The notes under the pieces: model-generated
What the model was told of the DNA's origin: nothing
The model's input: the letters and a program-made list of their open reading frames with translations, nothing else
Databases searched by the model: none
Made by a program: the position numbers and the translations under genes
Part shown: in pieces, positions 2,393 through 28,313 of the stretch
Layout: each line of letters begins with the position of its first letter
How positions within the stretch are numbered: the first letter of the stretch is position 1
IMG/VR virus record: IMGVR_UViG_3300034117_002447
Location: 186,001-250,000 of that record
Length of the DNA stretch: 64,000 bases
Strand: one strand, 5' to 3'

Positions 2393-2397
2393 TAAAG

Positions 2398-2493: not shown

Positions 2494-2506
2494 TCATTTA
2501 TAATAA

Positions 2507-3487: not shown

Positions 3488-3524
3488 TACACAACTAAAA
3501 ATAAAAAAATAAAATAAAACAATA

Positions 3525-3788
3525 ATGGCAGAACAATACGAAGACCGAAGATTTGTTATCTTTAATGTTAGCGAACTATCAACAATTGATTTTGATCAAG
3601 TATTTGAAACTTCAGCGGACACCGTTCGAAAGTCAGTTAACGGGACTTTGACTTTTGTAAAATACGACTTGCCGATGCCTTCATCAGTTACGGCATTAAC
3701 TAGCCGATCACAGGAGTACACGTTTTCGCAAATCGTACCTATCTTGGCAACCTCGGCTTGGACAGATAGTTCAATAATGATACCGTAA
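3525..3788 (+). CDS. Small conserved phage hypothetical protein
   Basis: 87-aa ORF with an A-rich leader. The FDQVxETSADTVRKSVxGTxTFVK motif is recalled from aquatic phage proteins next to LamG genes. Confidence 0.6.
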   Translation: MAEQYEDRRFVIFNVSELSTIDFDQVFETSADTVRKSVNGTLTFVKYDLPMPSSVTALTSRSQEYTFSQIVPILATSAWTDSSIMIP

Positions 3789-7915: not shown

Positions 7916-7922
7916 TTGTTAA

Positions 7923-8601: not shown

Positions 8602-11388
8602 TTATTTCCAAAAGTAGATTAATTGTAGTGCATTATTGTAGCCGCACATTAGCATGTAAGAATTAAAACCTAGTTTATTTAGTCGACTAACGAAATTGTT
8701 TCTAAGGTCTTCATTAAACCCTAAGTGTTCGTGATGGTACTCTACTGCGATATTTCTGATCTTTGATAAATTCTCATCGCTTATTCCATTTAGCGCAATA
8801 ATTTCAGAGCCTTCAATATCTACCTTTAAAAAGTCAATTCGGTCGATTAATTTATTCTCCAGAATGAAATCTAAGGTATATAAGTTTACGTCGTATTGGG
8901 TCTGTAATGGATCTTTATGATGCCATAAGTTAGATCCCCCTAGGTGAGAACTTTCAGTAAGAGTTAAGGTTCCCAAGTTATCAGCAATTGCTGCATTAAA
9001 TAGGACCGCATTTTCTGGAGCATTCTGTTTTAAGATTTCAAAGTATCGACGATCAGGCTCGAAAGTTACAATTTTACTTGCGCCCATGTGATATGCATAT
9101 CGGGTAAAGATTCCAAGATTACCGCCCAAATCCACAACAACATCGCCGGGTCTAACCTTAACTTCTCCATGTTCGTAATCTTTTAGATTATAGATCTCAT
9201 GATAGATTGCGTAATCCCAACCGTATTGATGAGCAATATCCATTGTTCCTCCTGGTACATCTTTAATTGAGCCAAGATTTTTGATTTCATTTTTACCAAC
9301 AAAGAAGTATTCAGTATCGTGGAAGTTTTTATCACGCTGAGTCTCGATATAGTCTGTCATAACCGTTGCGAATCCAAGATCTTTATTTCCATGAAAGTAG
9401 AGAATATTTGATTTATCTTTAGGTACGAATTGCCAGCCGAATATTTTTCCAAAGTTCTTTGGGCCAGAGTCTCTCCAAAACGAGATAAAGTGTTCCATTG
9501 CTTTGCCAGTTGTTCCCAATAAGTCGCCGTCCCATTCTGAGACATCAAAGTTTGAAATTGGCAAAAATGTCGTAAAATTGTGTTTACTTCTCAAGTAATT
9601 ATCGAGACCTTCATCGTTCCATTGTAGTAATTCGTCGTATTGGTCAAGCGGTGTTTCTTTGTACATTTTAAGAATCTCATCAAAGAACCAGGTACACTCT
9701 TTATTGTAGACGTACATGCAAATATGAGCCTTTGTAAATAACCTCTTGACACCATCTCGGTCGCAGATACTTTGGTTAAATAATTGTCTTCCACGAAGTC
9801 CGTCTTTTCTGGTAAAGAAGCCAATAAAATCGTCCTGTATGTGAACGTCTGGAATTGGATAATTTGTAATCTGGCTAAAGTACTTAACGATATTGTCAAT
9901 ATTATAATTTGCAACAATATCTCCGTCTAACCAAACTAAATTCTCGAAACTTTCTTGAATAGCTGCTTCTTTACACGCATACTGTTTCCAATACCATTTA
10001 TCGTGTTCTGAATGATATGGAATACTTAATGTTCGGCTAATAACGTTTGGATGATTAAACGGAACTTCACAGTCTATTCCATATACGAGAATTTTACGAT
10101 TTGAGAATTTAGCTAACGATATAACTAATTTCTCAATGATTGGCATGTATGCTAGATTACCACAGGTCACCCATGCAAAGTCAGTTGAGTATTCAATTGA
10201 CTGCGGGCTAATAAGTTCCTGAATGTGATCTTGTGCGATCGTGGCAGCATTCTGCCAAGTAAATTCATTTCTAATTTGTTCTGATTCCATTAATGCTGAT
10301 TTTTTATAATTTTCAAACTGGTCGTAAACTAGTCTAAGTTTTATTTGAAGATCTGAGAAATTAGGCTCACAGAAATTACCTGGAGTATTCTGATTCCAAG
10401 ACTCCTCATTTGCTACACCTGCTGGAACTTCGCCAATAATTGAAACTGGAATACCCTTACCTTGAGCAAACTGCAGTTGTGCTCCCCAATTTGAGTACAT
10501 TGATGGAACTCCGCATGACATTGCCTCAATTAATGGAAGATTCCAGCCTTCACTTCTGGCACATGACACAAAAACGTCAGCCGACTTAAGTAGTTTTACG
10601 TAATCTTCTTTTGACTGATGGTGTAGTACTTTAATTCCTGAATGAGAAAGCTCAAACTTAGCTAATCTCTCCTCAGTAGAAGAGAGGCCGTCCGTTGCAA
10701 ATCGATTATCTACGCTAATGACAAGCTCAACATTCTCATCTTGTGAAAAGGTTTCAGTAAAAGCTCTGATAATTTCTTTGGTTGACTTACGATATTCCCA
10801 GCGACCCACTACGACAAATCGGAAAGGCCTGTTCTCTGGAAAAGCCGAATCCGGTGAGGTCGGTTTAAACATCTCAGTGTCTACTCCCTCTGGTACAACT
10901 TTTACTTTATGTGATGCGATTCCTTGCTCAATTGTGCACTGTTTTTGCCATTCACTAGGAACCCAAACTTGATCGAACTTTTTAAGTTGAGCAAAGAAGT
11001 CTTCAGGTTGTCTAGTTGTTTCCCATACATTGTATGCAATTGATGGACCTGAGTAATCTTGGCTAAAGTACAGGTGACCTGTGTCATTTAGCACAATATT
11101 AACAGTTGGCTCAGTAGATTGAATTGGGTACTTCAAGTATAGAGGAAACTCCGCATGACCTGTTTGAGTACCTAACGTTTGTTCAGATAACATCGTCTTT
11201 AACTCAGAGTCTATATAATACTCCCCATTGTGAGGCTCATCGTCATTGTAACCTTTCCATGAATCGCCGATCGTCCAATTTCTAACTGAAACTGGCGTTA
11301 ATTGATTTAGAGCTTTAAAGAAATTTCGTGAATGGCAATTATATCCGGTATCGCCTATTATTGAAGTGTGAGCTTTGATTAGAGTCAT
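8602..11388 (-). CDS. Tri-domain enzyme: GT4 (GT-B) glycosyltransferase + GT-A-like DxD domain + FkbM-family methyltransferase
   Basis: GRWEYRK and DVFVSCARSEGWNLPLIEAMSCGVP (GT4); VWLDGDIV (DxD); VVDLGGNLG...FEPD...LKVDIEGSE (FkbM). Start moved to the ATG at 11388 (MTLIKAH). Confidence 0.8.
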   Translation of the reverse strand: MTLIKAHTSIIGDTGYNCHSRNFFKALNQLTPVSVRNWTIGDSWKGYNDDEPHNGEYYIDSELKTMLSEQTLGTQTGHAEFPLYLKYPIQSTEPTVNIVLNDTGHLYFSQDYSGPSIAYNVWETTRQPEDFFAQLKKFDQVWVPSEWQKQCTIEQGIASHKVKVVPEGVDTEMFKPTSPDSAFPENRPFRFVVVGRWEYRKSTKEIIRAFTETFSQDENVELVISVDNRFATDGLSSTEERLAKFELSHSGIKVLHHQSKEDYVKLLKSADVFVSCARSEGWNLPLIEAMSCGVPSMYSNWGAQLQFAQGKGIPVSIIGEVPAGVANEESWNQNTPGNFCEPNFSDLQIKLRLVYDQFENYKKSALMESEQIRNEFTWQNAATIAQDHIQELISPQSIEYSTDFAWVTCGNLAYMPIIEKLVISLAKFSNRKILVYGIDCEVPFNHPNVISRTLSIPYHSEHDKWYWKQYACKEAAIQESFENLVWLDGDIVANYNIDNIVKYFSQITNYPIPDVHIQDDFIGFFTRKDGLRGRQLFNQSICDRDGVKRLFTKAHICMYVYNKECTWFFDEILKMYKETPLDQYDELLQWNDEGLDNYLRSKHNFTTFLPISNFDVSEWDGDLLGTTGKAMEHFISFWRDSGPKNFGKIFGWQFVPKDKSNILYFHGNKDLGFATVMTDYIETQRDKNFHDTEYFFVGKNEIKNLGSIKDVPGGTMDIAHQYGWDYAIYHEIYNLKDYEHGEVKVRPGDVVVDLGGNLGIFTRYAYHMGASKIVTFEPDRRYFEILKQNAPENAVLFNAAIADNLGTLTLTESSHLGGSNLWHHKDPLQTQYDVNLYTLDFILENKLIDRIDFLKVDIEGSEIIALNGISDENLSKIRNIAVEYHHEHLGFNEDLRNNFVSRLNKLGFNSYMLMCGYNNALQLIYFWK

Positions 11389-11486
11389 TGACTTGATAAT
11401 TGTTTCTATTTTATACTCGATTTTTATATTTTGTTTAGGTAAACCGTAAAAAATATTTAAGTATAAAAGTAAAAACACAAAGATAC

Positions 11487-12077
11487 GTGGAACGAAGATT
11501 AATGTTTCCTCAAAAAGAGGTAGAATTATTGAACTGGTACTGGTTTAGCGAGGGCTTCTCAGCGGAAGAAATTGATAGAGTTCGCAAAGTATCAGAACTT
11601 TTTGAATATCATCAAGCTGTTACTTTTGGAAATCAAGGAGAAAACCATAAAATTAGAAAGAGCAAAATTAAATGGTTAGGCGAGAATAACGAATCGACTA
11701 AATGGATTTATGATAAGTTGATGGAATTTGCAATAATTGCAAATCGAGAACTTTGGAATTTTGACCTAATATCAATAATTGACTCAATCCAGTACACTGA
11801 ATATTATGAAGGTGGTGGTCACTATGATTACCATGTAGATCTTGGACCAGGTTCAGCATCTCACCGGAAAATTAGTATTGTTGTACAATTAAGCGACCCT
11901 TCTGAATACGAAGGCGGCGATTTTGAAATACTTAAAGGAATAACTCCTGATAAATTGCCCCGAAATAAGGGAGCAACTATTTTATTCCCAAGTTACCTAT
12001 TACATAGAGTAACTCCAGTAACCAAAGGAATTAGGCGAAGCCTAGTTATTTGGATAGGAGGAAATTCATTAAGATAA
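11487..12077 (+). CDS. 2OG-Fe(II) oxygenase, prolyl-4-hydroxylase/PKHD-like
   Basis: HxD (YDYHVD), RKISIVVQLSDPSEYEGG, distal His in HRVTPVTKG and the 2OG-binding RRSLV; GTG start. Confidence 0.85.
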   Translation: MERRLMFPQKEVELLNWYWFSEGFSAEEIDRVRKVSELFEYHQAVTFGNQGENHKIRKSKIKWLGENNESTKWIYDKLMEFAIIANRELWNFDLISIIDSIQYTEYYEGGGHYDYHVDLGPGSASHRKISIVVQLSDPSEYEGGDFEILKGITPDKLPRNKGATILFPSYLLHRVTPVTKGIRRSLVIWIGGNSLR

Positions 12078-15013: not shown

Positions 15014-18000
15014 TTATGGAAGCATTCCATTACTTATTATTTCATATCTAGCTGCTAATGTAATACGATTATTGGCATTATTGTTAATCTTTACAGCAAG
15101 ATCAGTTCCACCGGCTCCGACTGTAATTGTGGCAGTCCATAGGGATGCATCTTGAGCAACAACAATTTCGGTGAAACCTGCACCTACTAGTGAAAGAGCA
15201 CCGGCTATATTCTTAACCGCTCCAGTGTAGTGGCGATAATCAGTTGAACCGGTAACCTCTTCAGAACCTACTACGTATAATTCAATACCGTATATTCGAT
15301 TAGGGGTTGGAAAGTCAAATAGGATAGGTGTACCTGGATCAATGAATAATTGACCAGCTGCCATGGGGTTAATCCGTCCAGAATAGAGTACTCCATTATG
15401 AACTAATTTTTCGCGATCGTCAGATGCAGACTGTTTACCGTAAATGTATTCTTTAGGTCGACCGTCATATAGTGCAACTGGTCCTAATAGTAAAACATCA
15501 TTAGTATCGTCTTCTCTAATATCGAAAGTTGAATCTTCAATAGTAGTCCCAGAAGCACCGTATGTTACGTATGTATTAAATGTACCGGACGTTGTGATTG
15601 ACGTACCTGATGTTCCAGCTGAACCTGAAGTACCAGAAGTACCTCTTGTTCCAGAAGAACCTGAAGTACCTGAAGAACCTGTTCCACCAGGTGCACCAGT
15701 TGCTCCACTAGTTCCAGAAGTACCAGAAGTACCTCTTGTTCCAGAAGAACCAGACGAACCGGATGTTCCAGCCGTACCGCTTGAGCCGTTTGAACCAAAT
15801 GTTACAAACGAAATTGTATAGTTTATTCCATTCGTTAGTGTTCCATTTGCGGCGATTGGCGCAAGTCCAAGATCAAACCATGTTGTGTTATTGGTAATTG
15901 AAATAAGTCTGTAAATACCTATTATGCTATTATTACCAACTTCGGTAATTTGAATTAAGCTATTAGAGGTTATTAATGATAACCAGGTTGCGTAGTTTAC
16001 ACTAGCAGAAGAAGTTGTAGATACGCTAAGTTTAGCTAGCGCAGCGAAGGTAGCACTATCTGTTCTAAAGAATGTTGCTCCAGGGTTAGAGTGTGCTGGT
16101 ATACTTGAATCAAATAACCATCTACCGCTATTTGAACCGTCAATACCGGCAATACCAGTCGCTCCGGATGTTCCGCTTGAGCCGTTTGAACCAGAAGTAC
16201 CAGAAGTACCTCTTGTTCCAGAAGAACCAGAAGAACCATTTGAACCAGAAGTACCAGAAGAACCAGAAGAACCATTTGAACCAGAAGTACCAGAAGAACC
16301 AGAAGTACCAGAAGTACCTCTTGTTCCAGAAGAACCAGAAGAACCATTTGAACCAGAAGTACCAGAAGAGCCTGATGTACCAGACACTCCGTCTATACCG
16401 GAGGTTCCGCTTGAACCAGCTGATCCTGAAGTACCACTTGAGCCGTTTGAACCAGAAGTTCCAGAAGTACCGCTTGTGCCTCTTGTTCCAGAAGAACCTG
16501 AGCTACCATTTGAACCGGAAGTTCCGCTTGATCCATTTGAACCTGAAGTTCCTGATGTACCTGAAGAACCGTTTGAGCCGCTTGTTCCAGAAGAACCTGA
16601 GCTACCATTTGAACCGCTTGTTCCACTTGATCCATTTGAACCAGATGTTCCAGACGTTCCAGAAGAACCGTTTGAACCGGATGTACCTGAACTTCCAGCT
16701 GAACCTGATGTTCCAGAAGAACCGTTAGAACCGGAAGTACCTGATGTTCCACTTGAGCCGTTTGCACCAGAAGTACCTGATGTACCGCTTGATCCATTTG
16801 AACCTGAAGTACCTGATGTACCACTAGTACCTCGTGTCCCAGACGAACCTGAGCTACCATTTGAACCGGATGTACCTGAAGAACCTGAAGTTCCGGATAC
16901 TCCGTCTATACCAGAAGTTCCGCTTGAACCGGAAGTACCTGAAGTACCAGAAGTACCTCTTGTTCCAGAAGAACCAGAAGAACCATTTGAACCGGAAGTA
17001 CCAGATGTACCTGAACTTCCATTAGAACCTGACGTACCTGAAGTACCTGAGCTACCATTAGAACCCGAAGTTCCACTTGATCCATTTGAACCAGAAGTAC
17101 CAGATGTTCCAGAAGAACCGTTAGAGCCGGATGTTCCGGAAGTTCCGCTTGATCCATTTGAACCAGATGTACCTGAAGTTCCACTTGAGCCGTTAGAACC
17201 AGATGTTCCTGAAGTACCAGAAGTACCTCTTGTTCCAGAAGAACCTGAACTACCGTTTGAACCTGAAGTACCAGAGCTTCCATTCGAACCAGAAGTACCT
17301 GAAGAACCACTTGTACCACTTGAGCCGTTTGAACCTGACGTTCCAGAAGAACCATTTGAACCTGAAGTTCCCGAAGTTCCCGAAGAACCATTTGAACCTG
17401 AAGTTCCAGAAGAACCATTTGAACCTGATGTACCTGATGTGCCTGAAGAACCGGCTGTTCCAGAAGTACCGCTTGTACCGCTTGTACCTCTTGTTCCAGA
17501 AGAACCTGAGCTACCATTTGAACCTGACGTACCGGAACTACCATTTGAACCGGAAGTACCTGACGAACCTGAAGTTCCTGATACTCCATCTATACCAGAT
17601 GTTCCACTTGATCCGTTTGAACCTGACGTTCCAGATGTACCAGATGTTCCTGAAGTACCTCTTGTTCCAGAAGAACCGGAGCTACCGTTTGAGCCTGACG
17701 TACCTGAACTTCCATTTGAACCTGAAGTTCCGCTTGTTCCAGAAGAACCATTTGAACCAGATGTTCCTGAAGTTCCAGAAGAACCATTTGAACCGGAAGT
17801 ACCAGAGGTTCCACTTGATCCATTTGAACCGGAAGTACCAGAGGTTCCACTTGATCCATTTGAACCAGATGTACCTGATGTACCGCTTGTGCCTCTTGTT
17901 CCAGAAGAACCGGAGCTACCGTTTGAGCCTGAAGTACCTGAACTTCCATTTGAACCTGAAGTTCCGCTTGTACCTGAGCTACCATTAGAACCGCTTGTAC

Positions 18001-21000
18001 CTGATGTACCAGATGTACCAGAAGTACCTCGTGTTCCAGAAGAACCGCTTGATCCGTTAGAGCCTGATGTTCCAGAAGAACCTGATGTTCCAGATACTCC
18101 ATCTATACCAGAAGTTCCAGAAGATCCATTAGAACCTGAAGTTCCAGAAGTACCGCTTGTTCCTCTTGTTCCAGAAGAACCACTTGAGCCGTTTGAACCT
18201 GAAGTACCACTTGAACCATTTGAACCTGAAGTCCCGCTTGAGCCGCTTGAACCGTTTGAACCTGATGTTCCAGATGTTCCACTTGATCCATTTGAACCTG
18301 ATGTACCAGAGCTTCCATTAGAACCAGAAGTACCTGACGTACCTGAGCTACCGTTTGAACCTGAAGTACCTGACGTACCTGAGCTACCGTTTGAACCAGA
18401 CGTACCTGAGCTACCGTTTGAGCCGCTTGATCCTGAAGTACCAGAAGTACCTGATGCTCCAGATGCGCCGCTTGTTCCAGATGAACCGTTTGAACCGGAA
18501 GTACCAGCTGTACCGCTTGTTCCAGAAGTTCCAGAGCTACCATTTGAACCTGATGTTCCTGAAGTGCCGGAAGAACCATTAGAACCTGAGGTTCCAGAAG
18601 AACCGTTTGAACCTGAAGTTCCACTAGTTCCAGAAGAACCATTTGAACCGGAAGTACCAGCTGTACCTGAAGTACCACTAGTTCCTCTTGTTCCAGAAGA
18701 ACCACTTGAGCCGTTAGAACCACTTGAACCGGAAGTACCTGAGCTTCCATTTGAACCGGAAGTACCAGCAGAACCTGAAGTTCCTGATACTCCATCTATA
18801 CCTGATGTTCCACTTGAACCTGACGTACCTGAGGTACCGCTTGTACCTGAAGTACCTCGTGTTCCAGAAGAACCTGAGCTACCATTTGAACCACTTGTTC
18901 CAGAAGAACCGTTTGAACCTGATGTTCCACTTGAGCCGGAAGTACCTGAAGAACCTGAAGTACCAGCTGTTCCGGAAGAACCGTTAGAACCAGATGTTCC
19001 GGAAGAACCATTTGAACCGGAAGTACCGGATGTTCCACTTGATCCGTTTGAACCTGAAGTACCACTTGATCCGTTTGAACCTGATGTTCCGCTTGTTCCT
19101 GAGCTACCGTTAGAACCAGAAGTCCCGCTTGTTCCTGAAGAACCGTTAGAACCAGAAGTCCCAGAAGATCCATTTGAACCGGACGTCCCGCTTGTTCCTG
19201 AAGTCCCGCTTGTACCGGATGTTCCTCTTGTTCCAGAAGAACCTGAGCTTCCATTTGAACCAGAAGTTCCACTTGAGCCGTTAGAACCTGATGTTCCAGC
19301 TGAACCTGAGGTTCCGGATACACCGTCTATACCTGAAGTACCTGAAGAACCGGACGTTCCAGCTGTACCACTTGTTCCGGATGTACCTGAAGTACCTCTT
19401 GTTCCAGAAGAACCTGAGCTACCGTTAGAACCAGAAGTTCCCGAAGAACCGTTTGAACCAGAAGTACCTGATGTACCTGAGCTACCATTTGAACCAGACG
19501 TGCCAGATGAACCGTTTGAACCTGAAGTTCCAGAAGTACCTGAACTTCCATTAGAACCTGAAGTTCCACTAGTTCCAGAAGAACCATTAGAACCTGAAGT
19601 TCCACTAGTTCCAGAAGAACCATTAGAACCAGAAGTACCTGAAGTACCGCTTGTACCTGAAGTACCTCTTGTTCCAGAAGAACCGCTTGAGCCGTTTGAA
19701 CCACTAGTTCCAGAAGAACCGTTTGAACCTGAAGAACCTGATGTACCAGAGCTACCATTTGATCCTGAAGTTCCGCTTGTTCCAGAAGTACCAGAGCTAC
19801 CATTTGAACCTGAAGTACCAGCTGAACCTGATGTTCCAGAAACACCGTCTATACCTGACGTTCCAGAGCTACCATTTGAGCCTGATGTACCTGATGTTCC
19901 AGAAGTACCTCTTGTTCCAGAAGAACCAGAAGAACCATTTGAACCAGAAGTTCCACTTGAGCCGGAAGTTCCTGAAGAACCTGAAGTTCCAGCGGTTCCA
20001 GAAGAACCGGAAGTACCGCTTGAGCCATTAGACCCAGAAGTTCCGCTTGTTCCAGAAGAACCTGAGCTTCCATTAGAACCAGATGTACCGGATGTACCAG
20101 TTGAACCTGATGTACCAGATGTTCCAGCAGTACCGCTTGAACCATTAGATCCAGAAGTTCCAGAAGAACCTGAAGTTCCAGACGAACCGTTTGATCCTGA
20201 AGTACCTGAAGTACCCGAGCTACCGTTTGAACCGGAAGTTCCTGATGTTCCAGAGCTTCCATTAGAACCAGAAGTTCCAGAAGATCCATTAGAACCAGAT
20301 GTACCAGAAGTACCTGAAGAACCTGAAGAACCGGAAGTTCCGCTTGAACCGGATGTTCCTGACGTACCTGAACTTCCATTTGAACCAGAAGTCCCAGATG
20401 TTCCTGAAGAACCATTAGAACCCGATGTTCCTGAAGTACCTCTTGTTCCAGAAGAACCAGAAGAACCATTTGAACCAGAAGTTCCAGAAGTACCAGCAGA
20501 ACCTGACGTTCCTGATACTCCATCTATACCTGATGTTCCGCTTGAACCTGAAGTACCTGAAGTACCTCTTGTTCCAGAAGAACCTGAAGAGCCATTTGAA
20601 CCAGAAGTTCCAGAAGAACCGTTTGATCCTGAAGTACCTGAAGTACCTGAACTTCCATTTGAACCTGAAGTCCCAGATGTTCCGGAAGAACCGTTTGACC
20701 CGGAAGTTCCAGAAGTACCTGAGCTTCCATTTGAACCGGAAGTACCTGATGTTCCTGAAGTACCCGATGTTCCTGAGCTACCATTTGAACCTGATGTACC
20801 TGAAGTACCAGAGCTTCCGTTTGAACCAGAAGTTCCAGATGTTCCAGAAGAACCATTTGAACCGGACGTACCGCTTGTTCCAGAAGAACCATTTGAACCT
20901 GATGTTCCGGATGTTCCAGAAGTACCTCTTGTTCCAGAAGAACCAGACGAACCGTTTGAACCAGAAGTTCCGGAGCTTCCATTTGATCCTGAAGTACCAG

Positions 21001-24000
21001 CTGAACCTGACGTTCCTGATACTCCATCTATACCGGAAGTTCCCGAGCTACCACTTGTACCTGAAGTACCGCTTGTTCCAGAAGTACCTCGTGTTCCAGA
21101 AGAACCTGAACTTCCATTTGAACCGGAAGTTCCTGATGTGCCAGAGCTTCCATTAGAACCAGAAGTTCCAGAAGAACCGCTTGTACCACTTGATCCGTTT
21201 GACCCTGAAGTTCCAGATGTTCCAGAAGAACCGTTTGAACCTGATGTACCTGAAGTTCCAGAAGATCCATTAGAACCAGATGTACCAGAAGATCCATTAG
21301 AACCTGAGGTTCCAGAAGAACCTGAAGTACCGGATGTACCATTTGAACCATCTACTCCGCTTATACCTGAAGTACCAGAAGTACCTCGTGTTCCAGAAGA
21401 ACCTGAGCTACCATTTGAACCACTTGTTCCAGAAGAACCGTTTGAACCTGAAGTTCCACTTGATCCGTTTGAACCTGAAGTTCCAGAAGAACCATTAGAG
21501 CCTGAAGTACCAGCAGAACCTGAAGTTCCAGATACTCCATCTATACCGGAAGTACCAGAAGAACCGGCTGTTCCGGAACTTCCATTTGATCCTGAAGTAC
21601 CGCTTGAGCCGTTTGAACCAGAAGTACCTGACGTTCCTGAGCTGCCGTTTGAACCTGAAGTTCCAGCTGTTCCAGAAGAACCATTAGAACCGCTTGTCCC
21701 AGAAGTACCTGAGCTACCATTAGAACCAGATGTTCCACTTGAGCCGTTTGAACCAGAAGTACCGGCGGTTCCTGAGGTTCCAGACGTACCTGAAGTTCCT
21801 GAGGTTCCGCTTGTACCAGTCGATCCTGACGTTCCGGATGTTCCGCTTGTACCAGCAGTGCCTGATGAACCTGATGTTCCAGAAGAACTTGAAATTTGGC
21901 CAGTTGAGGTTAACACAAAAGAGTAATTTTGAGTTCCCTCAGTGTACCAAGTCACATCATGATTTCCACTAGACTGATCGACTACGTATATTTTAACAAT
22001 CATTCTATCCGTTGGATTAATAGTTGTTGTTGGTAGCACTACATCAACGTTAGCTTCAACTGGAATCGTTGAACTAATCCAACCTATAAGAACTTGATTA
22101 GTTGGTATTACTGTTCCATAACTAACACCTGCACTATTTGCTAATTCAATAGTAACAAATGTGTCTGTATTAAATCCTGCGCCGTCTTTTAAGAAATGTA
22201 AATGGAATCTTTGTGTTCCTCCTGGTATTACAGAAAATCCTAATTCAGGAGTTATAAATTGTTGTACTAATACTGGAGTAGTACCTGTTGTAGTTTTAAG
22301 TATTGATTGTTGAGCAGCGCCGGTCGGATTAATATTTAGGTCTCTATACGTACCTATTCCAGAAGCAACTGACTGATTAAAATAATAAATTTGACCTGCC
22401 GATATTCCAGTAGCTCCACTAGTTCCTGAAGAACCAGATGTTCCACTTGAACCGGAAGTTCCAGAAGTTCCGCTTGTTCCAGAAGTTCCTGACGAACCTG
22501 AAGTTCCAGAAGTTCCGCTTGTACCCGCCGTGCCGGATGAACCTGATGTTCCCGAAGTTCCACTTGAACCAGAAGTTCCAGTAGTTCCAGAAGAACCTGA
22601 TGTTCCAGCCGTTCCGCTTGATCCATTTGAACCAGATGTTCCTGACGAACCAGAAGTACCTGAGCTACCGTCTGAACCTGAAGTTCCAGAAGAACCATTT
22701 GTTCCTGAGACTCCGTCTATTCCAGAAGTACCTGAAGAACCATCTGATCCTGACGTTCCAGAAGAACCATTTGAACCTGATGTACCAGATGTTCCTGACG
22801 AACCATTAGAACCACTTGTTCCAGAAGTACCTGAGCTACCATTTGAACCGGAAGTCCCTGATGTTCCAGAAGAACCGTTAGAACCTGATGTTCCTGACGA
22901 ACCAGAAGTACCTGAGCTACCGTCTGAACCCGATGTTCCAGAAGAACCGTTTGAACCTGAAGTACCAGATGAACCGTTAGAACCTGATGTTCCTGACGAA
23001 CCAGAAGTACCTGAGCTACCGGCTGAACCTGACGTACCAGAAGAACCATTTGTTCCTGAGACTCCGTCTATTCCACTAGTACCTGAAGAACCATCTGAGC
23101 CTGAAGTTCCAGAAGAACCATTTGAACCTGATGTACCAGAGGTACCATTTGAACCTGAAGTTCCAGAAGAACCATTTGAACCAGAAGTACCTGATGTTCC
23201 AGAAGAACCGTTTGAACCTGAAGTACCAGTTGAACCAGAAGTACCGGATGTTCCTGAAGAACCGTCTGAACCTGAAGTTCCTGAAGAACCGTTTGAACCT
23301 GATGTTCCAGAGCTACCATTTGAACCTGAAGTACCTGAAGTACCTGAGCTACCATCTGAGCCGGAAGTTCCGCTTGAGCCGTTTGTTCCTGAGACTCCAT
23401 CTATTCCAGAAGTTCCAGAAGAACCGTCTGAACCTGATGTACCGCTTGAGCCGTTAGAGCCTGAAGTACCAGATGTACCAGATGTTCCCGAAGAACCGTT
23501 AGAACCTGAAGTACCTGAAGTTCCAGAAGAACCTGAAGTACCAGAGCTACCGTTTGAGCCTGAAGTACCTGAGCTACCGTCTGAGCCACTAGTACCAGAA
23601 GAACCATTTGAACCAGATGTTCCTGAAGTACCAGAGCTACCATTTGAACCGGAGGTACCTGATGTTCCAGAAGAACCTGAAGTACCTGAGCTACCATCTG
23701 AACCTGATGTTCCCGAAGAACCATTTGTTCCAGAAACTCCGTCTATTCCAGAAGTTCCAGAAGAACCGTCTGAACCGCTAGTACCGCTTGAGCCGTTTGA
23801 ACCCGAAGTTCCAGAAGAACCGTTTGAACCTGAAGTTCCGCTTGTGCCGGAAGTTCCAGCTGAACCACTTGTTCCACTTGATCCGCTAGTACCCGAGCTA
23901 CCATTTGAGCCACTAGTACCTGAGCTACCATTTGAACCTGAAGTACCCGAAGTACCAGATGAACCAGAAGTACCGCTTGAGCCGTTTGAACCTGAAGTTC

Positions 24001-26206
24001 CTGAAGTACCTGAAGAACCGTTAGAACCAGAAGTACCTGAGCTACCGTCTGAACCTGACGTACCTGCTGAACCTGAAGTTCCTGATACACCATCTATTCC
24101 AGAAGTACCTGAAGAACCATCTGAACCTGAAGTTCCAGAAGAACCGTTTGAACCTGATGTACCGGATGTTCCAGAAGAACCGTTTGATCCTGAAGTTCCA
24201 GAAGAACCATCTGAACCTGACGTACCAGATGAACCATTTGTTCCTGAGACTCCATCTATTCCTGATGTACCTGAGCTACCGTCTGATCCTGAAGTACCTG
24301 AGGTACCATTTGAACCTGAAGTACCTGAGGTACCATTTGAACCGTTTGAACCTGAAGTTCCGTTTGAACCCGAAGTTCCAGAAGAACCATCTGAACCGGA
24401 CGTACCGGCAGAACCTGAAGTTCCTGATACTCCGTCTATTCCAGAAGTACCTGAGCTACCGTCTGATCCTGAAGTACCTGAGCTACCGTTTGATCCTGAA
24501 GTTCCAGAGCTACCATTTGAACCTGAAGTACCTGAGGTACCATTTGAACCTGAAGTACCGCTTGAGCCATCTGACCCTGAAGTTCCAGCCGAACCTGATG
24601 TTCCTGAGACTCCGTCTATTCCTGATGTTCCGGAAGATCCATTTGAACCAGAAGTTCCAGAAGAACCGTTTGAACCGGAAGTTCCAGAAGAACCATTTGA
24701 ACCGGAAGTACCTGAGCTACCGTCTGAACCTGACGTACCTGCTGAACCTGAAGTTCCGGAAACTCCGTCTATTCCTGATGTTCCCGAAGAACCGTCTGAC
24801 CCTGAAGTTCCAGAGCTACCATTTGAGCCTGATGTACCGCTTGAGCCGTTAGAACCTGAAGTTCCAGAAGAACCGTTTGAGCCTGATGTTCCAGAGCTAC
24901 CGTCTGAACCGCTTGTTCCAGAAGAACCGCTTGTTCCTGAGACTCCATCTATTCCTGAAGTACCTGAACTACCGTCTGAACCAGAAGTACCTGAAGTACC
25001 GGCTGACCCTGAAGTACCTGATGTTCCCGAAGAACCTGAAGTACCTGAGCTACCGTCTGAACCTGAAGTTCCAGCTGAACCTGAAGTTCCGGAAACTCCA
25101 TCTATTCCTGAAGTACCTGAGCTACCGTCTGAACCAGAAGTACCTGAAGAACCTGATGTACCAGTTGAACCAGAAGTACCTGATGTACCTGATGTACCTG
25201 AGCTACCGTCTGAACCTGAAGTTCCAGAAGAACCGTTTGTTCCAGAGACTCCATCTATTCCTGAAGTACCTGAGCTACCGTCTGAACCAGAAGTACCTGA
25301 AGAACCTGATGTACCAGTTGAACCAGAAGTACCTGATGTACCTGAGCTGCCGTCTGAACCTGAAGTTCCAGAAGAACCGTTTGTTCCAGAGACTCCATCT
25401 ATTCCTGAAGTACCAGAGCTGCCATCTGCACCAGAAGTCCCAGCTGAACCAGACGTTCCACTTGAACCGTTTGAGCCGGATGTACCAGAAGTACCGGTTG
25501 AACCGGACGTACCTGAAGTACCTGACGTACCAGATGAACCGGCAGTACCGGAAGTTCCACTTGTTCCTGAAGTACCGGATGAACTAGTAAGTCCATCTTC
25601 TAATGTTGTACCAATATAGTAAAAACCTTTAATATATGGATCAACTGATCCATAAGTAGAAGTTAAATAAGTAACCATTGAATCTGATAATAGTAGAATA
25701 CCATTATCGTAATTAAAAACCCAACTTACTTCAGTGCCTGCATTATCAGTAGTTAAGATTTGGGTTCCGCCTGATGCAGGATTACCATTCCAAAATTCAG
25801 CGGTCCATCCAATTGAAGGAGCACCGCTTGCTTGCAATATCTTTTGAGGTTGAATCCAGTCTAGGATTTGTGTGTTAAAATCGTTAAGCGTCGAACAGGC
25901 TACCCATGTAGTATTATTACCTGAAATAACTTGACTTAATTCTACGGCATTTCCTGTAGAATATGCGTCTGCTACAATCGTTTCCAACGGTTGACCTGAT
26001 GCTAATAGAGCAACAGCCGCTGATTTATTTGCAACTGGGTTTTGTTTAACAACATCGAACTGAGTTAAAACTCGAGCAGCTGATATATTAGGGTTAAACG
26101 CAAACTTTGCTTCGTACCAATTAAAATTAGAGGCAGAATCAATTACGTTTGCGGCTTGGACCTTAAATACGAGTTTTAATCTTTCATTATCTGTATAGCC
26201 TGCCAT
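15014..26206 (-). CDS. Giant 3730-aa Gly/Ser/Thr repeat fibre protein (proline-free Gly-X-Y) with four non-repetitive domains
   Basis: Uninterrupted ORF. Unique domains at about 25585-26206, 21895-22410, 15790-16170 and 15014-15600, separated by (GSS/GTS/GSN)n blocks. Confidence 0.85.
16170..21895 (-). repeat. Repeat block 2 (~1900 codons of Gly-X-Y; GSN/GTR-type)
   Basis: Degenerate 9-nt unit array with 10 GIDGVSG landmarks, all encoded GGT-ATA. Confidence 0.9.
22410..25585 (-). repeat. Repeat block 1 (~1050 codons of Gly-X-Y; GSD-type, Arg-free)
   Basis: Degenerate 9-nt unit array with 13 GIDGVSG landmarks, all encoded GGA-ATA. Confidence 0.9.
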
Positions 26207-26213
26207 TTACTAA

Positions 26214-26414
26214 TTATATTATTTCGTTTTCTATTGATTCTTCCTGGTTTGCCTCATATAATTGACCTTCGTATTCTGCAACCATAATATTAAATTCATT
26301 TATTGTTGTTTTAAATACGTTAACCATATCATCAGAAACTCGTATACTAAGAGAAACACTCTGCTTATCTTTATCTATTTTAACCTTAAGCTTTTTATCG
26401 AAACTTTTTTCCAT
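26214..26414 (-). CDS. Small hypothetical protein
   Basis: 66-aa ORF tightly packed between two same-strand genes. Confidence 0.55.
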   Translation of the reverse strand: MEKSFDKKLKVKIDKDKQSVSLSIRVSDDMVNVFKTTINEFNIMVAEYEGQLYEANQEESIENEII

Positions 26415-26429
26415 ATTATTAATTTTTTT

Positions 26430-28313
26430 TTAGTTGAATGTTACAGTCACTGTATCGATTCTAATAGCTGAATTGTGGATTTTAAATTCTACGTATATTC
26501 CGTTTGTTGCATTAAATCCTCCAAATGTTCCATTTATTGTATTTCCACTGGATGAACCTAATCGGATTTGACCATCAGTTGCACCATCATCAAATGTTCC
26601 AAAATTATAACCTGAACCGTTTAGGATTAATGGATACGAAGTAGGTCCAAAAACTCCAACGGTTGCTCCTATTTTACGAACAGTTACAGTAAGAGCACCG
26701 CTAATTAAATCAGCTAGAGCAGATCCGCCTGCGAAAGTTCCAGCGAATACCATTGAAAAACTAGGAATTGGAACGCTTGACGAACTTAGTGTAGTATAAA
26801 ATTTTCTATAGTACGATGCAGCTGCAGTAAGTGAAGAATAGTTTGGGTTTGAACCATTTAAGTCTGATTTAAAAGCAGCTAGATCGGGTTGAATTGTTGC
26901 AGTATTTGGTGCAGTTAAGAAATATTGATCAGGTCTAACGATTGTACCACCGACAACGCAAGCATTTCCGTTTGATAGACTTGCGGTAGAAACCCATGCA
27001 GTCGTGTAATCGCTTTGTAATCTAAAAGCCTCATCGTCAAATCGCTCTACGTATTGAGTGCTATTTCCACTAGTTGGATATGTGTCCACTAATATTGAAT
27101 GAGTTGAAGAAGATTTAGTTCCGCCTGAAGACCATGGATCAAATAGTGAAGCAGTCGCGGCTGCAGTTGCTCCTCGATACCTAAAATTTGAAGAATTAAT
27201 CGCCCAATTTAAAATATCATATTCAGCAGCTGTATTGTTGAAGAAATTGGTCCATCCAGTAAAAGTACCAGAAGTTGGTGACCATGCATATTCAGCAATA
27301 GTTGGAACTCCGTACGATGGTGCAACAAATTGAAAATTAGTATTTGCGCCAAGAGCACGGCCTTGAGTATTTGCGTTTAGGTTATTAATTGCATCAACGT
27401 GTGCACTAAACTGTGAAGTTAGAGTGTAGTACTCAACACCGCTTAGATGCTTGGTTACAATATTTCCTAGAGTTTCTTCGATTGTACAAGTTGAACCGGC
27501 TCCAAAGCTTGGAGTAGATGCATTTGTATCAAAGAAAACTGCAGATTGTGTATAAGTGAAAGTTTGAGCACCATCACTAGTTGAATCAGTTAGGTTTGTA
27601 ATAACTATATTGTATTTACCGCCGTCTATTAAACCTACGCCAGATAGTACTTGATCAATATCAACGGTTACGGTAATGTCAGCTTTTTGTTTTAAACTAT
27701 CAGTTGCAAAACCGGCAATAATAATGTCAATACCGTCTGTACTTGAATATGTCCCGTCTGCAGTAACTCCCTGAGAAAATGTTGAAATAATAGTGGTGCC
27801 ATCTGCATCATATACATCAACGGTTACCGTAGCGTCTCCGCCTTGACCAGTTACCGCATTTGCTGTACTGAATGAGACTGTGCTACTAGTTGTCGTTGAC
27901 TGATTTGTACCTGCCCAAGTTCCAGCCTTAAATGGAGTTCCTTCAGTCGTTGGATTGCTTATTCTAACCGTTGATCTAGCTAAAGTTTCTGATACTAATC
28001 CAGACGAGGTTCCGTCGTTTGTGCCAAAGTGACTTGCGAATGTTGGAGTAGGAACGTAAACATTTATTGTACTTGAATCTCCAGGTTTCTGAGCTCCAAG
28101 TATATCAATTCCAACAAAATTAACTTTTGAATAATTTCCGACAAGAACGCCTTCATCATAAAAATCAATTCCGCTAATTCCACTTGAGCCGGTATTTGGA
28201 GAATCATTCCAATATAAATTACCCGAATTATCTATTGCTAAAAATTTAGTCTTGGTGTTATCCTGGGATACTCCGCTAAGATCAACTTGTTTTATTTTAA
28301 GTTTGTGGGACAT
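26430..28313 (-). CDS. Ser/Thr/Gly-rich putative virion structural protein
   Basis: 627 aa, rich in beta-type T/S/G residues, first gene behind a late-promoter motif; carries a vestigial TGSSGISG. Confidence 0.6.
   Translation of the reverse strand: MSHKLKIKQVDLSGVSQDNTKTKFLAIDNSGNLYWNDSPNTGSSGISGIDFYDEGVLVGNYSKVNFVGIDILGAQKPGDSSTINVYVPTPTFASHFGTNDGTSSGLVSETLARSTVRISNPTTEGTPFKAGTWAGTNQSTTTSSTVSFSTANAVTGQGGDATVTVDVYDADGTTIISTFSQGVTADGTYSSTDGIDIIIAGFATDSLKQKADITVTVDIDQVLSGVGLIDGGKYNIVITNLTDSTSDGAQTFTYTQSAVFFDTNASTPSFGAGSTCTIEETLGNIVTKHLSGVEYYTLTSQFSAHVDAINNLNANTQGRALGANTNFQFVAPSYGVPTIAEYAWSPTSGTFTGWTNFFNNTAAEYDILNWAINSSNFRYRGATAAATASLFDPWSSGGTKSSSTHSILVDTYPTSGNSTQYVERFDDEAFRLQSDYTTAWVSTASLSNGNACVVGGTIVRPDQYFLTAPNTATIQPDLAAFKSDLNGSNPNYSSLTAAASYYRKFYTTLSSSSVPIPSFSMVFAGTFAGGSALADLISGALTVTVRKIGATVGVFGPTSYPLILNGSGYNFGTFDDGATDGQIRLGSSSGNTINGTFGGFNATNGIYVEFKIHNSAIRIDTVTVTFN

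What the first reader, a model, noticed from the sequence alone, without database searches (positions are those of the whole stretch)
15014..26206. About 3000 residues of proline-free Gly-X-Y: a collagen-register megaprotein built from Ser/Thr/Asn
Seen: the apparent low-complexity GSSGTSG sequence keeps Gly at every third position ([18 protein letters not shown]) across blocks of ~1050 and ~1900 residues, with no Pro in those blocks. Established: a collagen triple helix rises ~0.29 nm per residue, so a triple-helical form would span roughly 0.3 + 0.55 micrometre. Ser/Thr-rich triplets are poor helix formers, but Y-position Thr glycosylation stabilises vent-worm cuticle collagen. Gly-X-X repeats also form polyproline-II bundles (snow-flea antifreeze protein, phage S16 gp38). 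Inference: either a glycosylation-dependent triple helix or a very large PPII bundle.
Basis: partly seen in the sequence, partly recalled or inferred. Interest (0 to 1): 0.75.

Follow-up and report, generated by a model that had tools for sequence, protein, structure and literature searches.

The report
Micron-long proline-free collagen-like phage fibre
A 271-kb lake-water jumbo phage encodes a 3730-residue protein with 1014 unbroken, proline-free Gly-X-Y triplets; it is most likely a trimeric collagen-like virion fibre nearly 0.9 micrometre long, far longer than any comparable array among the best 150 matches in a search of 1.84 billion proteins.

Summary
ORF 15014-26206 (- strand, 3730 aa) holds three Gly-X-Y runs with no register break: 353, 639 and 22 triplets. 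There is no Pro in the first two runs. X is Ser, Thr, Ile or Val. Y is Ser, Asn, Asp, Arg or Ala.

It is not an assembly artefact. Five other lake-metagenome assemblies give the array at 99.6-99.9% identity over the first 10.6 kb. Four of them differ only by indels that leave every run unbroken. The longest exact DNA repeat is under 100 bp.

Four diverged orthologues carry 554 to 1149 triplets. One has a single unbroken run of 3447 residues.

The context is a T4-like jumbo phage of lake water. The N-terminal 210 aa are conserved and also head globular structural proteins of other phages. Beta-sandwich nodes separate the arrays. The C-terminal domain is predicted to trimerise and is swapped between orthologues. 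The genome's only GT4 glycosyltransferase lies downstream and is syntenic in three relatives.

Best reading: a homotrimeric, segmented collagen-like host-capture fibre, possibly O-glycosylated. A polyproline-II bundle is unlikely. The Thr-at-Y analogy fails because Thr sits at X. Short Pro-free Ser/Thr Gly-X-Y fibres are common; the length is the novelty. The triple helix, the glycosylation and the attachment site are untested.

The parts
15014..26206 (-). Whole ORF, 3730 aa (323 kDa, pI 4.3): segmented collagen-like fibre protein.
25577..26206 (-). N-terminal domain, residues 1-210. Conserved module and presumed virion anchor.
   Evidence: It matches phrog_33494 at E 1.7e-29. It is 78-83% identical in the giant orthologues and 28-42% identical at the N-terminus of 650-1074 aa globular proteins of Shewanella and Vibrio phages and of a 178-kb IMG/VR phage. 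Only its C-terminal half (residues 98-206) matches two Brevundimonas phages.
22400..25576 (-). Gly-X-Y block 1, residues 211-1269. 353 triplets, 0 Pro, 40 Asp, no basic residues. The GIDGVSG landmark recurs every 48-60 residues and then every 111-117 residues.
   Evidence: Pfam Collagen 495 bits
21881..22399 (-). Internal node 1, residues 1270-1442. All-beta, probably a jelly-roll domain.
   Evidence: It is conserved at 52% and 32% identity in two orthologues and at 31% in an unrelated phage fibre, P0152. The AF2 model has 10 strands, pLDDT 63 and pTM 0.66. Foldseek matches to birnavirus VP2 and TNF-family jelly rolls reach only TM 0.45-0.5. An Atlas hit scores 0.97, and that hit's model resembles PepX_C/CBM folds.
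16130..21880 (-). Gly-X-Y block 2, residues 1443-3359. 639 triplets, 0 Pro. It carries 22 Gly-Thr-Arg triplets within [10 protein letters not shown] landmarks, and GIDGVSG every 171-231 residues.
   Evidence: Pfam Collagen 293 bits for its first 600 aa
15797..16129 (-). Internal node 2, residues 3360-3470. Small domain.
   Evidence: Atlas hits score 0.93-0.94 to viral clusters. The structural neighbours of the top hit are domains inside phage proteins that carry Collagen repeats, T4 gp9/10-like N-termini or phage fibre repeats. This is a lead only.
15599..15796 (-). Gly-X-Y block 3, residues 3471-3536. 22 triplets, 1 Pro.
15017..15598 (-). C-terminal domain, residues 3537-3730. Predicted homotrimeric knob and presumed distal host-binding tip.
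   Evidence: Three copies of residues 3471-3730 gave ipSAE 0.81 against a best control of 0.00. The mark was reached by 21 of 30 proteins solved as pairs of one chain and by 0 of 23 solved as single chains. Confident contacts lie almost entirely in the globular part. There is no Pfam, PHROG or PDB sequence match. Orthologues carry unrelated C-termini: one looks like a beta-helix (by eye), one weakly resembles a cement protein.
26214..26414 (-). 66-aa ORF immediately upstream of the fibre gene. It is conserved in all four orthologous loci.
   Evidence: Vibrio phage 1.121.O has a 49-aa ORF in the same position.
26430..28313 (-). 627-aa partner gene, syntenic with the N-domain gene.
   Evidence: It matches phrog_31482 at E 1e-32. 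It is 29% identical (E 6e-38) to the gene preceding the N-domain protein in Shewanella phage 1/4.
12387..14999 (-). 870-aa second collagen-like protein. It mixes Pro-rich [11 protein letters not shown] blocks with the same GSSGTSG and [10 protein letters not shown] blocks, around an internal globular domain.
   Evidence: Its DNA is about 64-66% identical to parts of the giant gene.
11487..12077 (+). 196-aa 2OG-Fe(II) oxygenase, PKHD-type hydroxylase-like.
   Evidence: Pfam PF13640 at E 4.7e-14 and PiuC at E 4e-10. It was not found in three relatives.
8602..11478 (-). 958-aa fusion of a GT4 glycosyltransferase and an FkbM methyltransferase. This is the only Glycos_transf_1 match in the 271-kb genome.
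   Evidence: The GT4 half is 49-51% identical and lies downstream of the fibre gene in three relatives.
5183..8588 (-). A 221-aa methyltransferase (7923-8588) and a 910-aa methyltransferase plus GT9-like protein (5183-7915).

Best explanation
The gene encodes a homotrimeric, segmented collagen-like fibre of the virion of a freshwater T4-like jumbo phage.

Shown:
- 1014 in-register, essentially Pro-free Gly-X-Y triplets lie in three runs.
- The array is reproduced in independent assemblies.
- The register, and the X/Y residue asymmetry, are conserved over 4538 triplets in five orthologues.
- The gene lies in a neighbourhood with weak T4 neck-protein and tail sheath stabiliser matches.
- The N-terminal domain is conserved, and the C-terminal domains are swapped between orthologues.
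- A GT4 gene is syntenic downstream.

Predicted:
- The C-terminal 194-aa domain trimerises.
- The 173-aa internal node is a beta-sandwich.

Inferred:
- The N-terminal 210-aa domain, together with the conserved 627-aa and 66-aa upstream gene products, anchors the trimer to the particle. Neck or collar versus baseplate is undecided.
- The three Gly-X-Y segments form triple helices of about 303, 548 and 19 nm.
- The globular nodes and the C-terminal knob nucleate folding and hold the three chains in register.
- The C-terminal knob is the exchangeable host-recognition tip.
- About 1690 Ser/Thr hydroxyls per chain stabilise the imino-acid-free helix through hydration. O-glycosylation by the linked GT4 (and, in this phage, GT9 and methyltransferases) probably adds to this, at lake temperatures.
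- A thin flexible line of about 0.9 micrometre contour (rms reach roughly 160-390 nm for persistence lengths of 15-100 nm) enlarges the capture radius for scarce hosts.
- Array length evolves quickly by indels that keep the triplet register.
For: 1. Register and composition.

2. Pfam Collagen scores 293-495 bits against a cut-off of 27.2.

3. It is not an artefact. The longest exact repeat is under 100 bp and 95% of 31-mers are unique. Five other IMG/VR assemblies give the first 10.6 kb of the gene at 99.6-99.9% identity. Four differ by indels that leave every run unbroken (0 or +1 triplet); the fifth lacks 36 triplets of block 1. Contig pieces from four further lake runs match exactly.

4. 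Selection on the register. Orthologues carry 554, 869, at least 952 and 1149 triplets. Their N-domains are only 78-83% identical, yet there are no breaks except at globular domains. Repeat units are only 64-90% identical at the DNA level, yet every Gly codon stays GGN.

5. X/Y asymmetry is shared by all five: Thr, Ile, Val and Leu at X; Ser, Asn, Asp, Ala and Arg at Y.

6. Fibre architecture. The N-domain heads globular 650-1074 aa proteins in the structural modules of other phages. C-termini are swapped. The C-terminal domain is predicted to trimerise, ipSAE 0.81 against a best control of 0.00, a mark reached by 21 of 30 proteins solved as pairs of one chain and by 0 of 23 solved as single chains. 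The node domains are of types seen in other phage collagen-like fibres.

7. Phage context. T4-type portal, gp15-like protein, weak gp13/14 matches and a gp55-like late sigma factor are present. Distant relatives PAU and PTm1/PTm5 are described as bearing flexible tail-fibre mops or head fibres (PMC7824862).

8. Feasibility. Pro-free (GAS)19 of Bucl8 was reported to give a triple-helix CD signal at 25 C that is lost at 50 C (PMC7682875).

9. Glycosylation link.
Against: - No structural data exist. The trimer model placed only the globular C-domain with confidence and not the 22-triplet Gly-X-Y stalk.
- GSS and GTS triplets contain no imino acids, and the arrays carry few charges (52 Asp, 24 Arg). 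Stability is therefore uncertain.
- No read or contig spans the array. The Logan contigs are 170-520 bp pieces and no long reads were examined.
- No proteomic or EM evidence ties the protein to a particle, and the phage is uncultured.
- The N-domain fold could not be modelled (pLDDT 50), so the anchor role rests on architecture and synteny only.
- The GT4 could instead act on DNA or on host glycans.
- One other Ser/Thr collagen-like phage fibre has no GT within 10 kb.
Confidence: 0.6

Rival explanations
1. It is a virion-attached but non-helical tether: an intrinsically disordered, probably heavily glycosylated mucin-like Ser/Thr/Gly brush. On this view the strict Gly periodicity is a by-product of amplifying 9-nt-multiple DNA units.
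For: - Composition is 34% Ser, 29% Gly and 15% Thr, with no imino acids.
- A hierarchical tandem-repeat structure is evident.
- The folding model gave no confident contacts in the Gly-X-Y stalk.
- GT and methyltransferase genes are adjacent.
Against: - A disordered linker would tolerate Gly substitutions and 3- or 6-nt indels. None is seen in 4538 triplets across five orthologues, although repeat units have diverged to 64-90% DNA identity and carry many X/Y changes.
- Among the assemblies, every Gly-X-Y run stays unbroken despite length differences of +1 and -36 triplets.
- The X/Y positional asymmetry is conserved.
- The arrays are bracketed by a predicted trimeric knob and beta-sandwich nodes.
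Confidence: 0.22
2. It is a very large polyproline-II or polyglycine-II bundle, like snow-flea antifreeze protein or phage S16 gp38. Antiparallel Gly-X-X strands would pack side by side within one chain.
For: - Gly sits at every third residue with small polar side chains.
- The phage lives in a cold-water habitat.
Against:
- Here 1917 residues, and 3447 in an orthologue, run with no interruption or turn motif. The shortest landmark spacing is 48 residues, and Gly is exactly one third.
- The modular N-anchor, stalk and swapped C-tip with a predicted trimeric end fit a fibre and not a compact bundle.
Confidence: 0.05
3. The array length is inflated or otherwise wrong because short-read assembly of repeats failed.
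For: - The sequence is repetitive.
- k=31 contigs break into 170-520 bp pieces with many spurious joints.
- One assembly is 36 triplets shorter.
Against: - There is no exact repeat of 100 bp or more, and 99% of 51-mers are unique.
- Five other assemblies from different samples agree at 99.6-99.9% over the first 10.6 kb.
- Diverged orthologues independently give arrays of 554-1149 triplets.
- The reading frame stays open through conserved terminal domains.
Confidence: 0.04
4. It is a collagen-like trimer that is not a host-recognition fibre. Instead it would form a dense glycosylated coat of hairs on the capsid, Mimivirus-fibril-like, for protection, decoy or particle adhesion.
For: - A hydroxylase-like gene, GTs and methyltransferases cluster beside two collagen-like genes, which from memory recalls the Mimivirus fibril glycosylation machinery.
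- In the Shewanella and Vibrio phages examined, and for a partial match in a Brevundimonas phage, N-domain genes lie just after the capsid genes.
- PTm1/PTm5 are described as having head fibres.
Against: - Swapped C-terminal domains between close orthologues are the signature of receptor-binding tips.
- A 0.9-micrometre length is far more than a coat needs.
Confidence: 0.09

Closest known systems
Collagen-like tail fibre and minor tail proteins of phages and prophages (Pfam PF01391 in PHROG tail-fibre families; E. coli O157 prophage collagen-like proteins, PMC3368898)
   Same: - Both have a Gly-X-Y stalk between an N-terminal attachment part and a C-terminal globular part in a phage structural module.
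- The neighbouring 870-aa protein hits these PHROG families at E down to 1e-125.
- Shorter Pro-free Ser/Thr versions with the same node domain exist in other environmental phages.
   Different: - Those in the best 150 of a search of 1.84 billion proteins reach at most 377 uninterrupted and 495 total triplets. Here there are 639 uninterrupted and 1014 total, and 1149 uninterrupted in an orthologue.
- There is no Pro at all in the two large blocks.
- The protein is segmented by in-line beta-sandwich nodes.
Burkholderia Bucl8 (GAS)n collagen-like region
   Same: It is an imino-acid-free, Ser-containing Gly-X-Y repeat next to a trimeric domain. A triple-helix CD signal was reported at 25 C for (GAS)19 made in E. 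coli (PMC7682875).
   Different: It has 6-38 triplets in an outer-membrane efflux protein of a bacterium. It has Ala at X, where this protein has Ser/Thr. It is not a virion protein.
Bacillus exosporium BclA and other Thr-rich bacterial collagen-like glycoproteins
   Same: They form hair-like surface filaments from a collagen-like stalk and a C-terminal trimeric jelly-roll knob. They are reported as glycosylated (PMC8968730).
   Different: BclA triplets are GPT-type, with Pro at X and Thr at Y (from memory, in line with the general statement in PMC8968730). Here Pro is absent and Thr is at X. BclA has tens of triplets, not a thousand.
Mimivirus collagen-like fibril proteins with virus-encoded hydroxylase and glycosyltransferase
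   Same: It is a virus that produces, hydroxylates and glycosylates its own collagen-like proteins (PMC8968730). The locus here also holds a PKHD-type hydroxylase-like gene, GT4, GT9 and methyltransferases.
   Different: It is a eukaryotic giant virus. The canonical substrates are Pro and Lys, which the giant protein's arrays lack entirely. The hydroxylase-like gene here was not found in the orthologous phages, so it more likely goes with the Pro-containing 870-aa neighbour.
Functional analogues: T4 fibritin (wac) whiskers and the phiCbK head filament candidate gp76
   Same: - Fibritin is a long trimeric fibre with an N-terminal virion anchor and a C-terminal trimerisation domain, encoded beside the neck genes (T4 details from memory). 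Weak gp13/14 matches and a gp15-like gene flank this locus.
- phiCbK gp76 is a 2799-aa Gly-rich, tandemly expanded protein proposed as a roughly 200-nm flexible head filament (PMC3556154).
   Different: Fibritin is a coiled coil of about 50 nm (from memory). gp76 has poly-Gly runs with 7% Pro and no reported Gly-X-Y register. Neither is homologous to this protein by any search run here.
Annelid and vent-worm cuticle collagens
   Different: In those collagens the stabilising Thr is at Y. Here only 11 of 489 array Thr residues are at Y. They are animal extracellular matrix proteins with Pro.

Membership tests
Collagen triple helix repeat (Pfam PF01391) | Gly at every third residue over many consecutive triplets | tested here: met
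   Runs of 353, 639 and 22 triplets have no break. In total 4538 triplets are in register across five orthologues.
Collagen triple helix repeat (Pfam PF01391) | Profile score above Pfam's gathering threshold | tested here: met
   The scores are 293.4 and 494.7 bits against a cut-off of 27.2.
Collagen triple helix repeat (Pfam PF01391) | Imino acids (Pro/Hyp) frequent at X or Y. This is typical but not strictly required. | tested here: not met
   There is no Pro in 2976 residues of the two large blocks. Pro-free (GAS)n is reported to form a helix anyway (PMC7682875).
Collagen triple helix repeat (Pfam PF01391) | Three chains wound in a triple helix (shown by CD, EM or structure) | not testable with these tools
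   Only a predicted trimer of the adjacent C-domain is available: ipSAE 0.81 against a best control of 0.00, a mark reached by 21 of 30 proteins solved as pairs of one chain and by 0 of 23 solved as single chains. The Gly-X-Y stalk itself was not placed with confidence.
Phage fibre protein (tail, neck or head fibre) | Encoded in the morphogenesis module of a tailed phage | tested here: met
   The genome is 271 kb with a T4-type portal, a gp15-like protein, weak gp13/14 matches and a gp55-like sigma factor. The neighbours hit phage-only PHROGs.
Phage fibre protein (tail, neck or head fibre) | Conserved N-terminal attachment part with an exchangeable C-terminal distal part | tested here: met
   The N-domain is 78-83% identical among orthologues and recognisable in other phage groups. 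The C-termini are unrelated.
Phage fibre protein (tail, neck or head fibre) | Physically present in the virion | not testable with these tools
   The phage is uncultured, and no proteome or micrograph was available.
PPII / polyglycine-II bundle proteins (snow-flea AFP, S16 gp38) | Short Gly-rich strands separated by turns or loops, folding back on one chain (definition from memory) | tested here: not met
   There is no interruption in 1917 residues, or in 3447 residues of the orthologue. The shortest landmark spacing is 48 residues.
Thr(Y)-glycosylated cuticle collagen (vent worms) | Thr in the Y position as the glycan acceptor | tested here: not met
   Thr is at X 478 times and at Y 11 times. 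Y is mostly Ser, 724 times.
Glycosylated collagen-like surface filament (BclA type) | Dedicated glycosyltransferases genetically linked to the collagen-like gene | tested here: met
   The only GT4 of the genome lies 3.5 kb downstream. It is syntenic in three relatives. An unrelated phage places two GT4 genes directly after a Ser/Thr collagen-like gene.
Glycosylated collagen-like surface filament (BclA type) | Glycans actually attached to the stalk | not testable with these tools
   This needs glycoproteomics or co-expression.

The most novel reading that the evidence does not exclude
An imino-acid-free Gly-(Ser/Thr)-(Ser/Asn) chain forms a genuine collagen triple helix close to one micrometre long. 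That is 870 nm here and about 985 nm from a single uninterrupted run in an orthologue. It would be stabilised only by Ser/Thr hydration and/or phage-encoded O-glycosylation, and registered by in-line beta-sandwich nodes. As far as I know it would be the longest appendage of any bacterial virus and one of the longest uninterrupted collagen helices. It would also be a natural test of the minimal sequence needed for collagen folding.
Probability: 0.4. Interest if true: 0.85.

Novelty: new variant of a known kind. Interest (0 to 1): 0.66.

Why it matters
- **Collagen biophysics.** A natural, strongly conserved helix candidate of 1000 triplets with no Pro, no Hyp and almost no charge pairs would show how far hydration or glycosylation of Ser/Thr alone can carry triple-helix stability. 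It would also offer a simple recombinant scaffold of tunable length.

- **Phage biology.** A fibre several times longer than the particle would change estimates of the encounter radius and adsorption kinetics of phages in dilute waters. This phage was found in at least 24 public lake-metagenome runs. The clade shows array length evolving by register-preserving indels while receptor tips are swapped. This is a clear case of modular fibre evolution.

- **Virion glycosylation.** The linked glycosyltransferase and methyltransferase genes, plus the hydroxylase-like gene of this phage, point to virion glycosylation in aquatic jumbo phages. Known examples are mainly in mycobacteriophages.

Tried and rejected
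- Megablast of 9.7 kb of flank against 50,697 phage records gave no match.
- A word-indexed search of 5.8 billion proteins with the N-domain, restricted to candidates of 2050-6500 aa, gave no hit. The orthologues came only from IMG/VR DNA.
- The C-terminal domain has no match in Pfam, PHROGs, PDB sequences or phage records. Its Atlas hits score 0.78 or less and were disregarded.
- The AF2 model of the N-domain from a 5-sequence alignment had pLDDT 50 and was not used for fold search.
- The AF2 model of node 1 has pLDDT 63, and its jelly-roll matches reach only TM 0.45-0.5. I treat this as a lead only.
I used it only to show that short Pro-free Ser/Thr Gly-X-Y runs are common; the longest found was 323 triplets of GTT type.
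- Logan contigs cannot span the array. They confirm local sequence only.
- The 627-aa partner shows no detectable similarity to the equally long gene upstream of the N-domain homologue in Brevundimonas phage Bajun.
- I considered membership of the published 'moraphage' lineage of aquatic jumbo phages (PMC12619734). It could not be established, and no HSP70 was found.
- The ice-binding or antifreeze idea has no support beyond a cold-water habitat.

Full report
**What is there.** The finding's coordinates are exactly one ORF on the minus strand, 15014-26206, encoding 3730 aa. A scripted phase count finds three Gly-X-Y runs with no register break: residues 211-1269 (353 triplets), 1443-3359 (639 triplets) and 3471-3536 (22 triplets). 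That is 3042 residues in register. The two large blocks contain no Pro, Lys, Glu, Gln or aromatic residue. X is Thr 478, Ser 476, Ile 27, Val 24. Y is Ser 724, Asn 168, Asp 52, Ala 34, Arg 24. Block 1 is purely acidic, with 40 Asp. Block 2 has 22 Arg and 12 Asp.

Two landmarks punctuate the arrays. GIDGVSG occurs 23 times, at spacings of 48-60, then 111-117, then 171-231 residues. [10 protein letters not shown] occurs 24 times, only in block 2 and the C-terminal run. So there is a hierarchy of super-repeats. One point matters for its interpretation: Thr sits at X and not at Y.

**Is the array real?** The GC content of the gene is 0.45-0.48 against about 0.36 around it, which follows from the Gly/Ser/Thr codons. 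The repeats are degenerate at the DNA level. Tandem Repeats Finder reports 64-90% matches between copies. No exact repeat reaches 100 bp, and 95% of 31-mers and 99% of 51-mers are unique.

The same phage was assembled independently in IMG/VR from several lake metagenomes, with contigs of 271160, 270962, 270136, 98652 and 96711 bp. Five of these cover the first 10.6 kb of the gene at 99.6-99.9% identity. In four, every Gly-X-Y run stays unbroken and block 1 is 0 or 1 triplet longer. The fifth lacks 36 triplets of block 1. At least 24 public lake-water runs hold 74-87% of the sampled words. In four of them, k=31 contigs of 170-520 bp match pieces of block 2 without a single difference, although none spans it.

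An assembly artefact is therefore very unlikely. The absence of a spanning long read remains a caveat.

**Relatives.** The window lies in a single 271,290-bp contig with 38% GC. Its large structural proteins are 24-30% identical to proteins of Sphingomonas phage PAU, Tenacibaculum, Chryseobacterium and Flavobacterium jumbo phages, and Lak megaphages. The genome has a T4-type portal, a T4 gp15-like tail sheath stabiliser, a 690-aa ORF with weak gp13/14 neck-protein matches from two libraries, and a gp55-like late sigma factor.

Four diverged orthologues of the giant gene were found, with N-domains 78-83% identical:
- 2514 aa, with 68, 196 and 290 triplets.
- 3011 aa, with one run of 869 triplets.
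- At least 3393 aa, with 322, 160 and 470 triplets.
- 3852 aa, with one uninterrupted run of 1149 triplets (3447 residues, about 985 nm if helical).

Over all five genes, 4538 triplets keep the register. They also keep the same positional asymmetry: Thr, Ile, Val and Leu at X; Ser, Asn, Asp, Ala and Arg at Y. Breaks occur only where a globular domain is inserted.

The repeat units have diverged substantially at other codon positions, while every Gly codon stays GGN with mixed third bases. No 3- or 6-nt indel is seen. I therefore read the periodicity as being under purifying selection, and not as a passive by-product of repeat amplification.

**Architecture.** The N-terminal 210 aa match PHROG 33494. 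They are found at the N-terminus of 650-940 aa, otherwise globular, proteins of Shewanella phage 1/4 and several Vibrio phages. They also head a 1074-aa protein without Gly-X-Y in a 178-kb IMG/VR phage. The C-terminal half alone matches two Brevundimonas phiCbK-like phages.

In the Shewanella and Vibrio phages examined, the gene follows a roughly 600-aa gene. That gene in Shewanella phage 1/4 is 29% identical (E 6e-38) to the 627-aa ORF upstream here. Both lie shortly after the capsid genes. A conserved 66-aa ORF sits directly upstream of the giant gene in all orthologues.

Node 1 (residues 1270-1442) recurs in two orthologues, and at 31% identity in an unrelated phage fibre. It models as a 10-strand beta domain with weak jelly-roll matches. 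Node 2 resembles domains embedded in other phage collagen-like or gp9/10-like proteins.

The C-terminal 194 aa have no detectable relatives. With three copies they give a confident homotrimer interface: ipSAE 0.81 against a best control of 0.00. That mark was reached by 21 of 30 proteins solved as pairs of one chain and by 0 of 23 solved as single chains. The confident contacts lie almost entirely in the globular part. Orthologues end in unrelated domains: one looks like a beta-helix by eye, and one weakly resembles a cement protein.

A conserved N-anchor, a variable-length stalk and a swapped C-tip form the standard logic of phage host-recognition fibres.

**Mechanism proposed.** Three chains trimerise at the C-terminal knob, and probably at the nodes. 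They zip into triple helices of about 303, 548 and 19 nm. The N-domain attaches the fibre to the particle. The distal knob binds the host.

Pro-free (GAS)19 of Bucl8 was reported to give a triple-helix CD signal at 25 C (PMC7682875). This shows that imino acids are not indispensable, and lake temperatures are lower still. All 24 Arg residues sit at Y, the position where Arg is known (from memory) to stabilise the helix.

A thin helix poor in imino acids should be flexible. For persistence lengths of 15-100 nm the rms reach would be 160-390 nm. That is a fishing line rather than a strut.

Whether the fibre sits at the neck (a fibritin-like position, suggested by the gp13/14-like and gp15-like neighbours and by the capsid-proximal position of N-domain genes elsewhere) or on the baseplate cannot be decided here. 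Distant relatives are described with both kinds of ornament (PMC7824862).

**Glycosylation.** Downstream of the giant gene lie, in order:
- An 870-aa collagen-like protein with Pro-rich and Pro-free blocks.
- An 82-aa ORF.
- A PKHD-type 2OG-Fe(II) hydroxylase-like gene on the other strand.
- A GT4-FkbM methyltransferase fusion.
- A methyltransferase.
- A methyltransferase-GT9 fusion.

The GT4 is the only Glycos_transf_1 match in the genome. It is conserved at 49-51% identity downstream of the fibre gene in three relatives. In an unrelated 161-kb phage contig, a 1601-aa Pro-free Ser/Thr collagen-like protein is followed directly by two GT4 genes and then by the tail sheath gene.

This makes fibre O-glycosylation a reasonable hypothesis, with mycobacteriophage virion glycosylation as precedent (cited in PMC12619734). 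It is not shown, and one further Ser/Thr fibre has no GT nearby.

The hydroxylase-like gene was not found in the relatives. The giant arrays have no Pro or Lys. It therefore more likely pairs with the Pro-containing 870-aa neighbour.

**Rivals.** A disordered mucin-like tether is the main rival (0.22). It explains the composition but not the absolute conservation of the register. A PPII bundle (0.05) lacks the turns it would need. Assembly error (0.04) is contradicted by the independent assemblies. A capsid hair coat (0.09) is a variant of the fibre reading that only localisation can separate.

**Novelty.** Collagen-like phage fibres are well known. The kind is therefore known.

What is new is the scale. 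Among the best 150 matches in 1.84 billion representative proteins, the longest uninterrupted run is 377 triplets and the largest total is 495. Here the figures are 639 uninterrupted and 1014 total, with 1149 uninterrupted in an orthologue. The complete absence of imino acids and the segmented, node-registered design add to this. No paper found describes it.

Noticed in passing
window 11487-12077 (+): A 196-aa 2OG-Fe(II) oxygenase resembles PKHD-type hydroxylases (PiuC). It sits between the glycosyltransferase gene and the Pro-containing 870-aa collagen-like gene. It was not found in three related phages. It may be a phage prolyl hydroxylase for the Pro-containing collagen-like protein.
   Followed up: partly
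window 12387-14999 (-): A second collagen-like protein of 870 aa is a mosaic. It combines Pro-rich [11 protein letters not shown] blocks, the same Pro-free GSSGTSG and [10 protein letters not shown] blocks as the giant protein, and an internal globular domain. Its DNA is only about 64-66% identical to the giant gene, so this is not a recent copy.
   Followed up: partly
window 26214-26414 (-): A conserved 66-aa ORF fills what looks like an intergenic gap directly upstream of the giant gene in this phage and all four orthologous loci. A Vibrio phage has a 49-aa ORF in the same position. It is a candidate assembly factor or adaptor.
   Followed up: partly
window 26430-28313 (-) and L001 7213-8988: A roughly 600-aa gene (phrog_31482) precedes the N-domain gene both here and in Shewanella phage 1/4 (29% identity). 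A similarly sized gene precedes it in a Vibrio phage. This looks like a conserved two-gene module of unknown role, placed soon after the capsid genes in those phages.
   Followed up: partly
window 38495-45328 (-): A 2277-aa protein carries at least six DUF5122 beta-propeller repeats. Next to it is a 784-aa protein with a 10-triplet Pro-containing collagen-like stretch (38301-38390). Both are probably further fibre or baseplate components.
   Followed up: no
window 761-2392 and 2507-3487 (+): Two proteins with Laminin_G_3 (concanavalin-like lectin) domains lie next to a T4 gp15-like tail sheath stabiliser (3812-4558).
   Followed up: no
window 31843-33195 (-): A 450-aa protein with an Amidoligase_2 domain lies inside the structural gene block.
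   Followed up: no
L152 10001-19251: In an unrelated 161-kb phage contig, a 1601-aa Pro-free Ser/Thr collagen-like protein is followed directly by two GT4 genes and then the tail sheath. This is an independent instance of the fibre-GT4 pairing.
   Followed up: partly
L085 (Betaproteobacteria MAG contig) and L046 (Nitrospiraceae MAG contig): Contigs binned to bacteria carry long Pro-poor Ser/Thr Gly-X-Y runs. One has 323 triplets of GTT type. Another has 104 triplets of [13 protein letters not shown] type, much like the phage landmark. These could be prophage or mis-binned phage DNA.
   Followed up: no
window 15014-26206: All 168 array Asn residues are at Y and are followed by Gly-Ser/Thr. The whole protein therefore carries 178 N-X-S/T sequons. 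This follows automatically from the repeat, but they are possible N-glycosylation sites.
   Followed up: no
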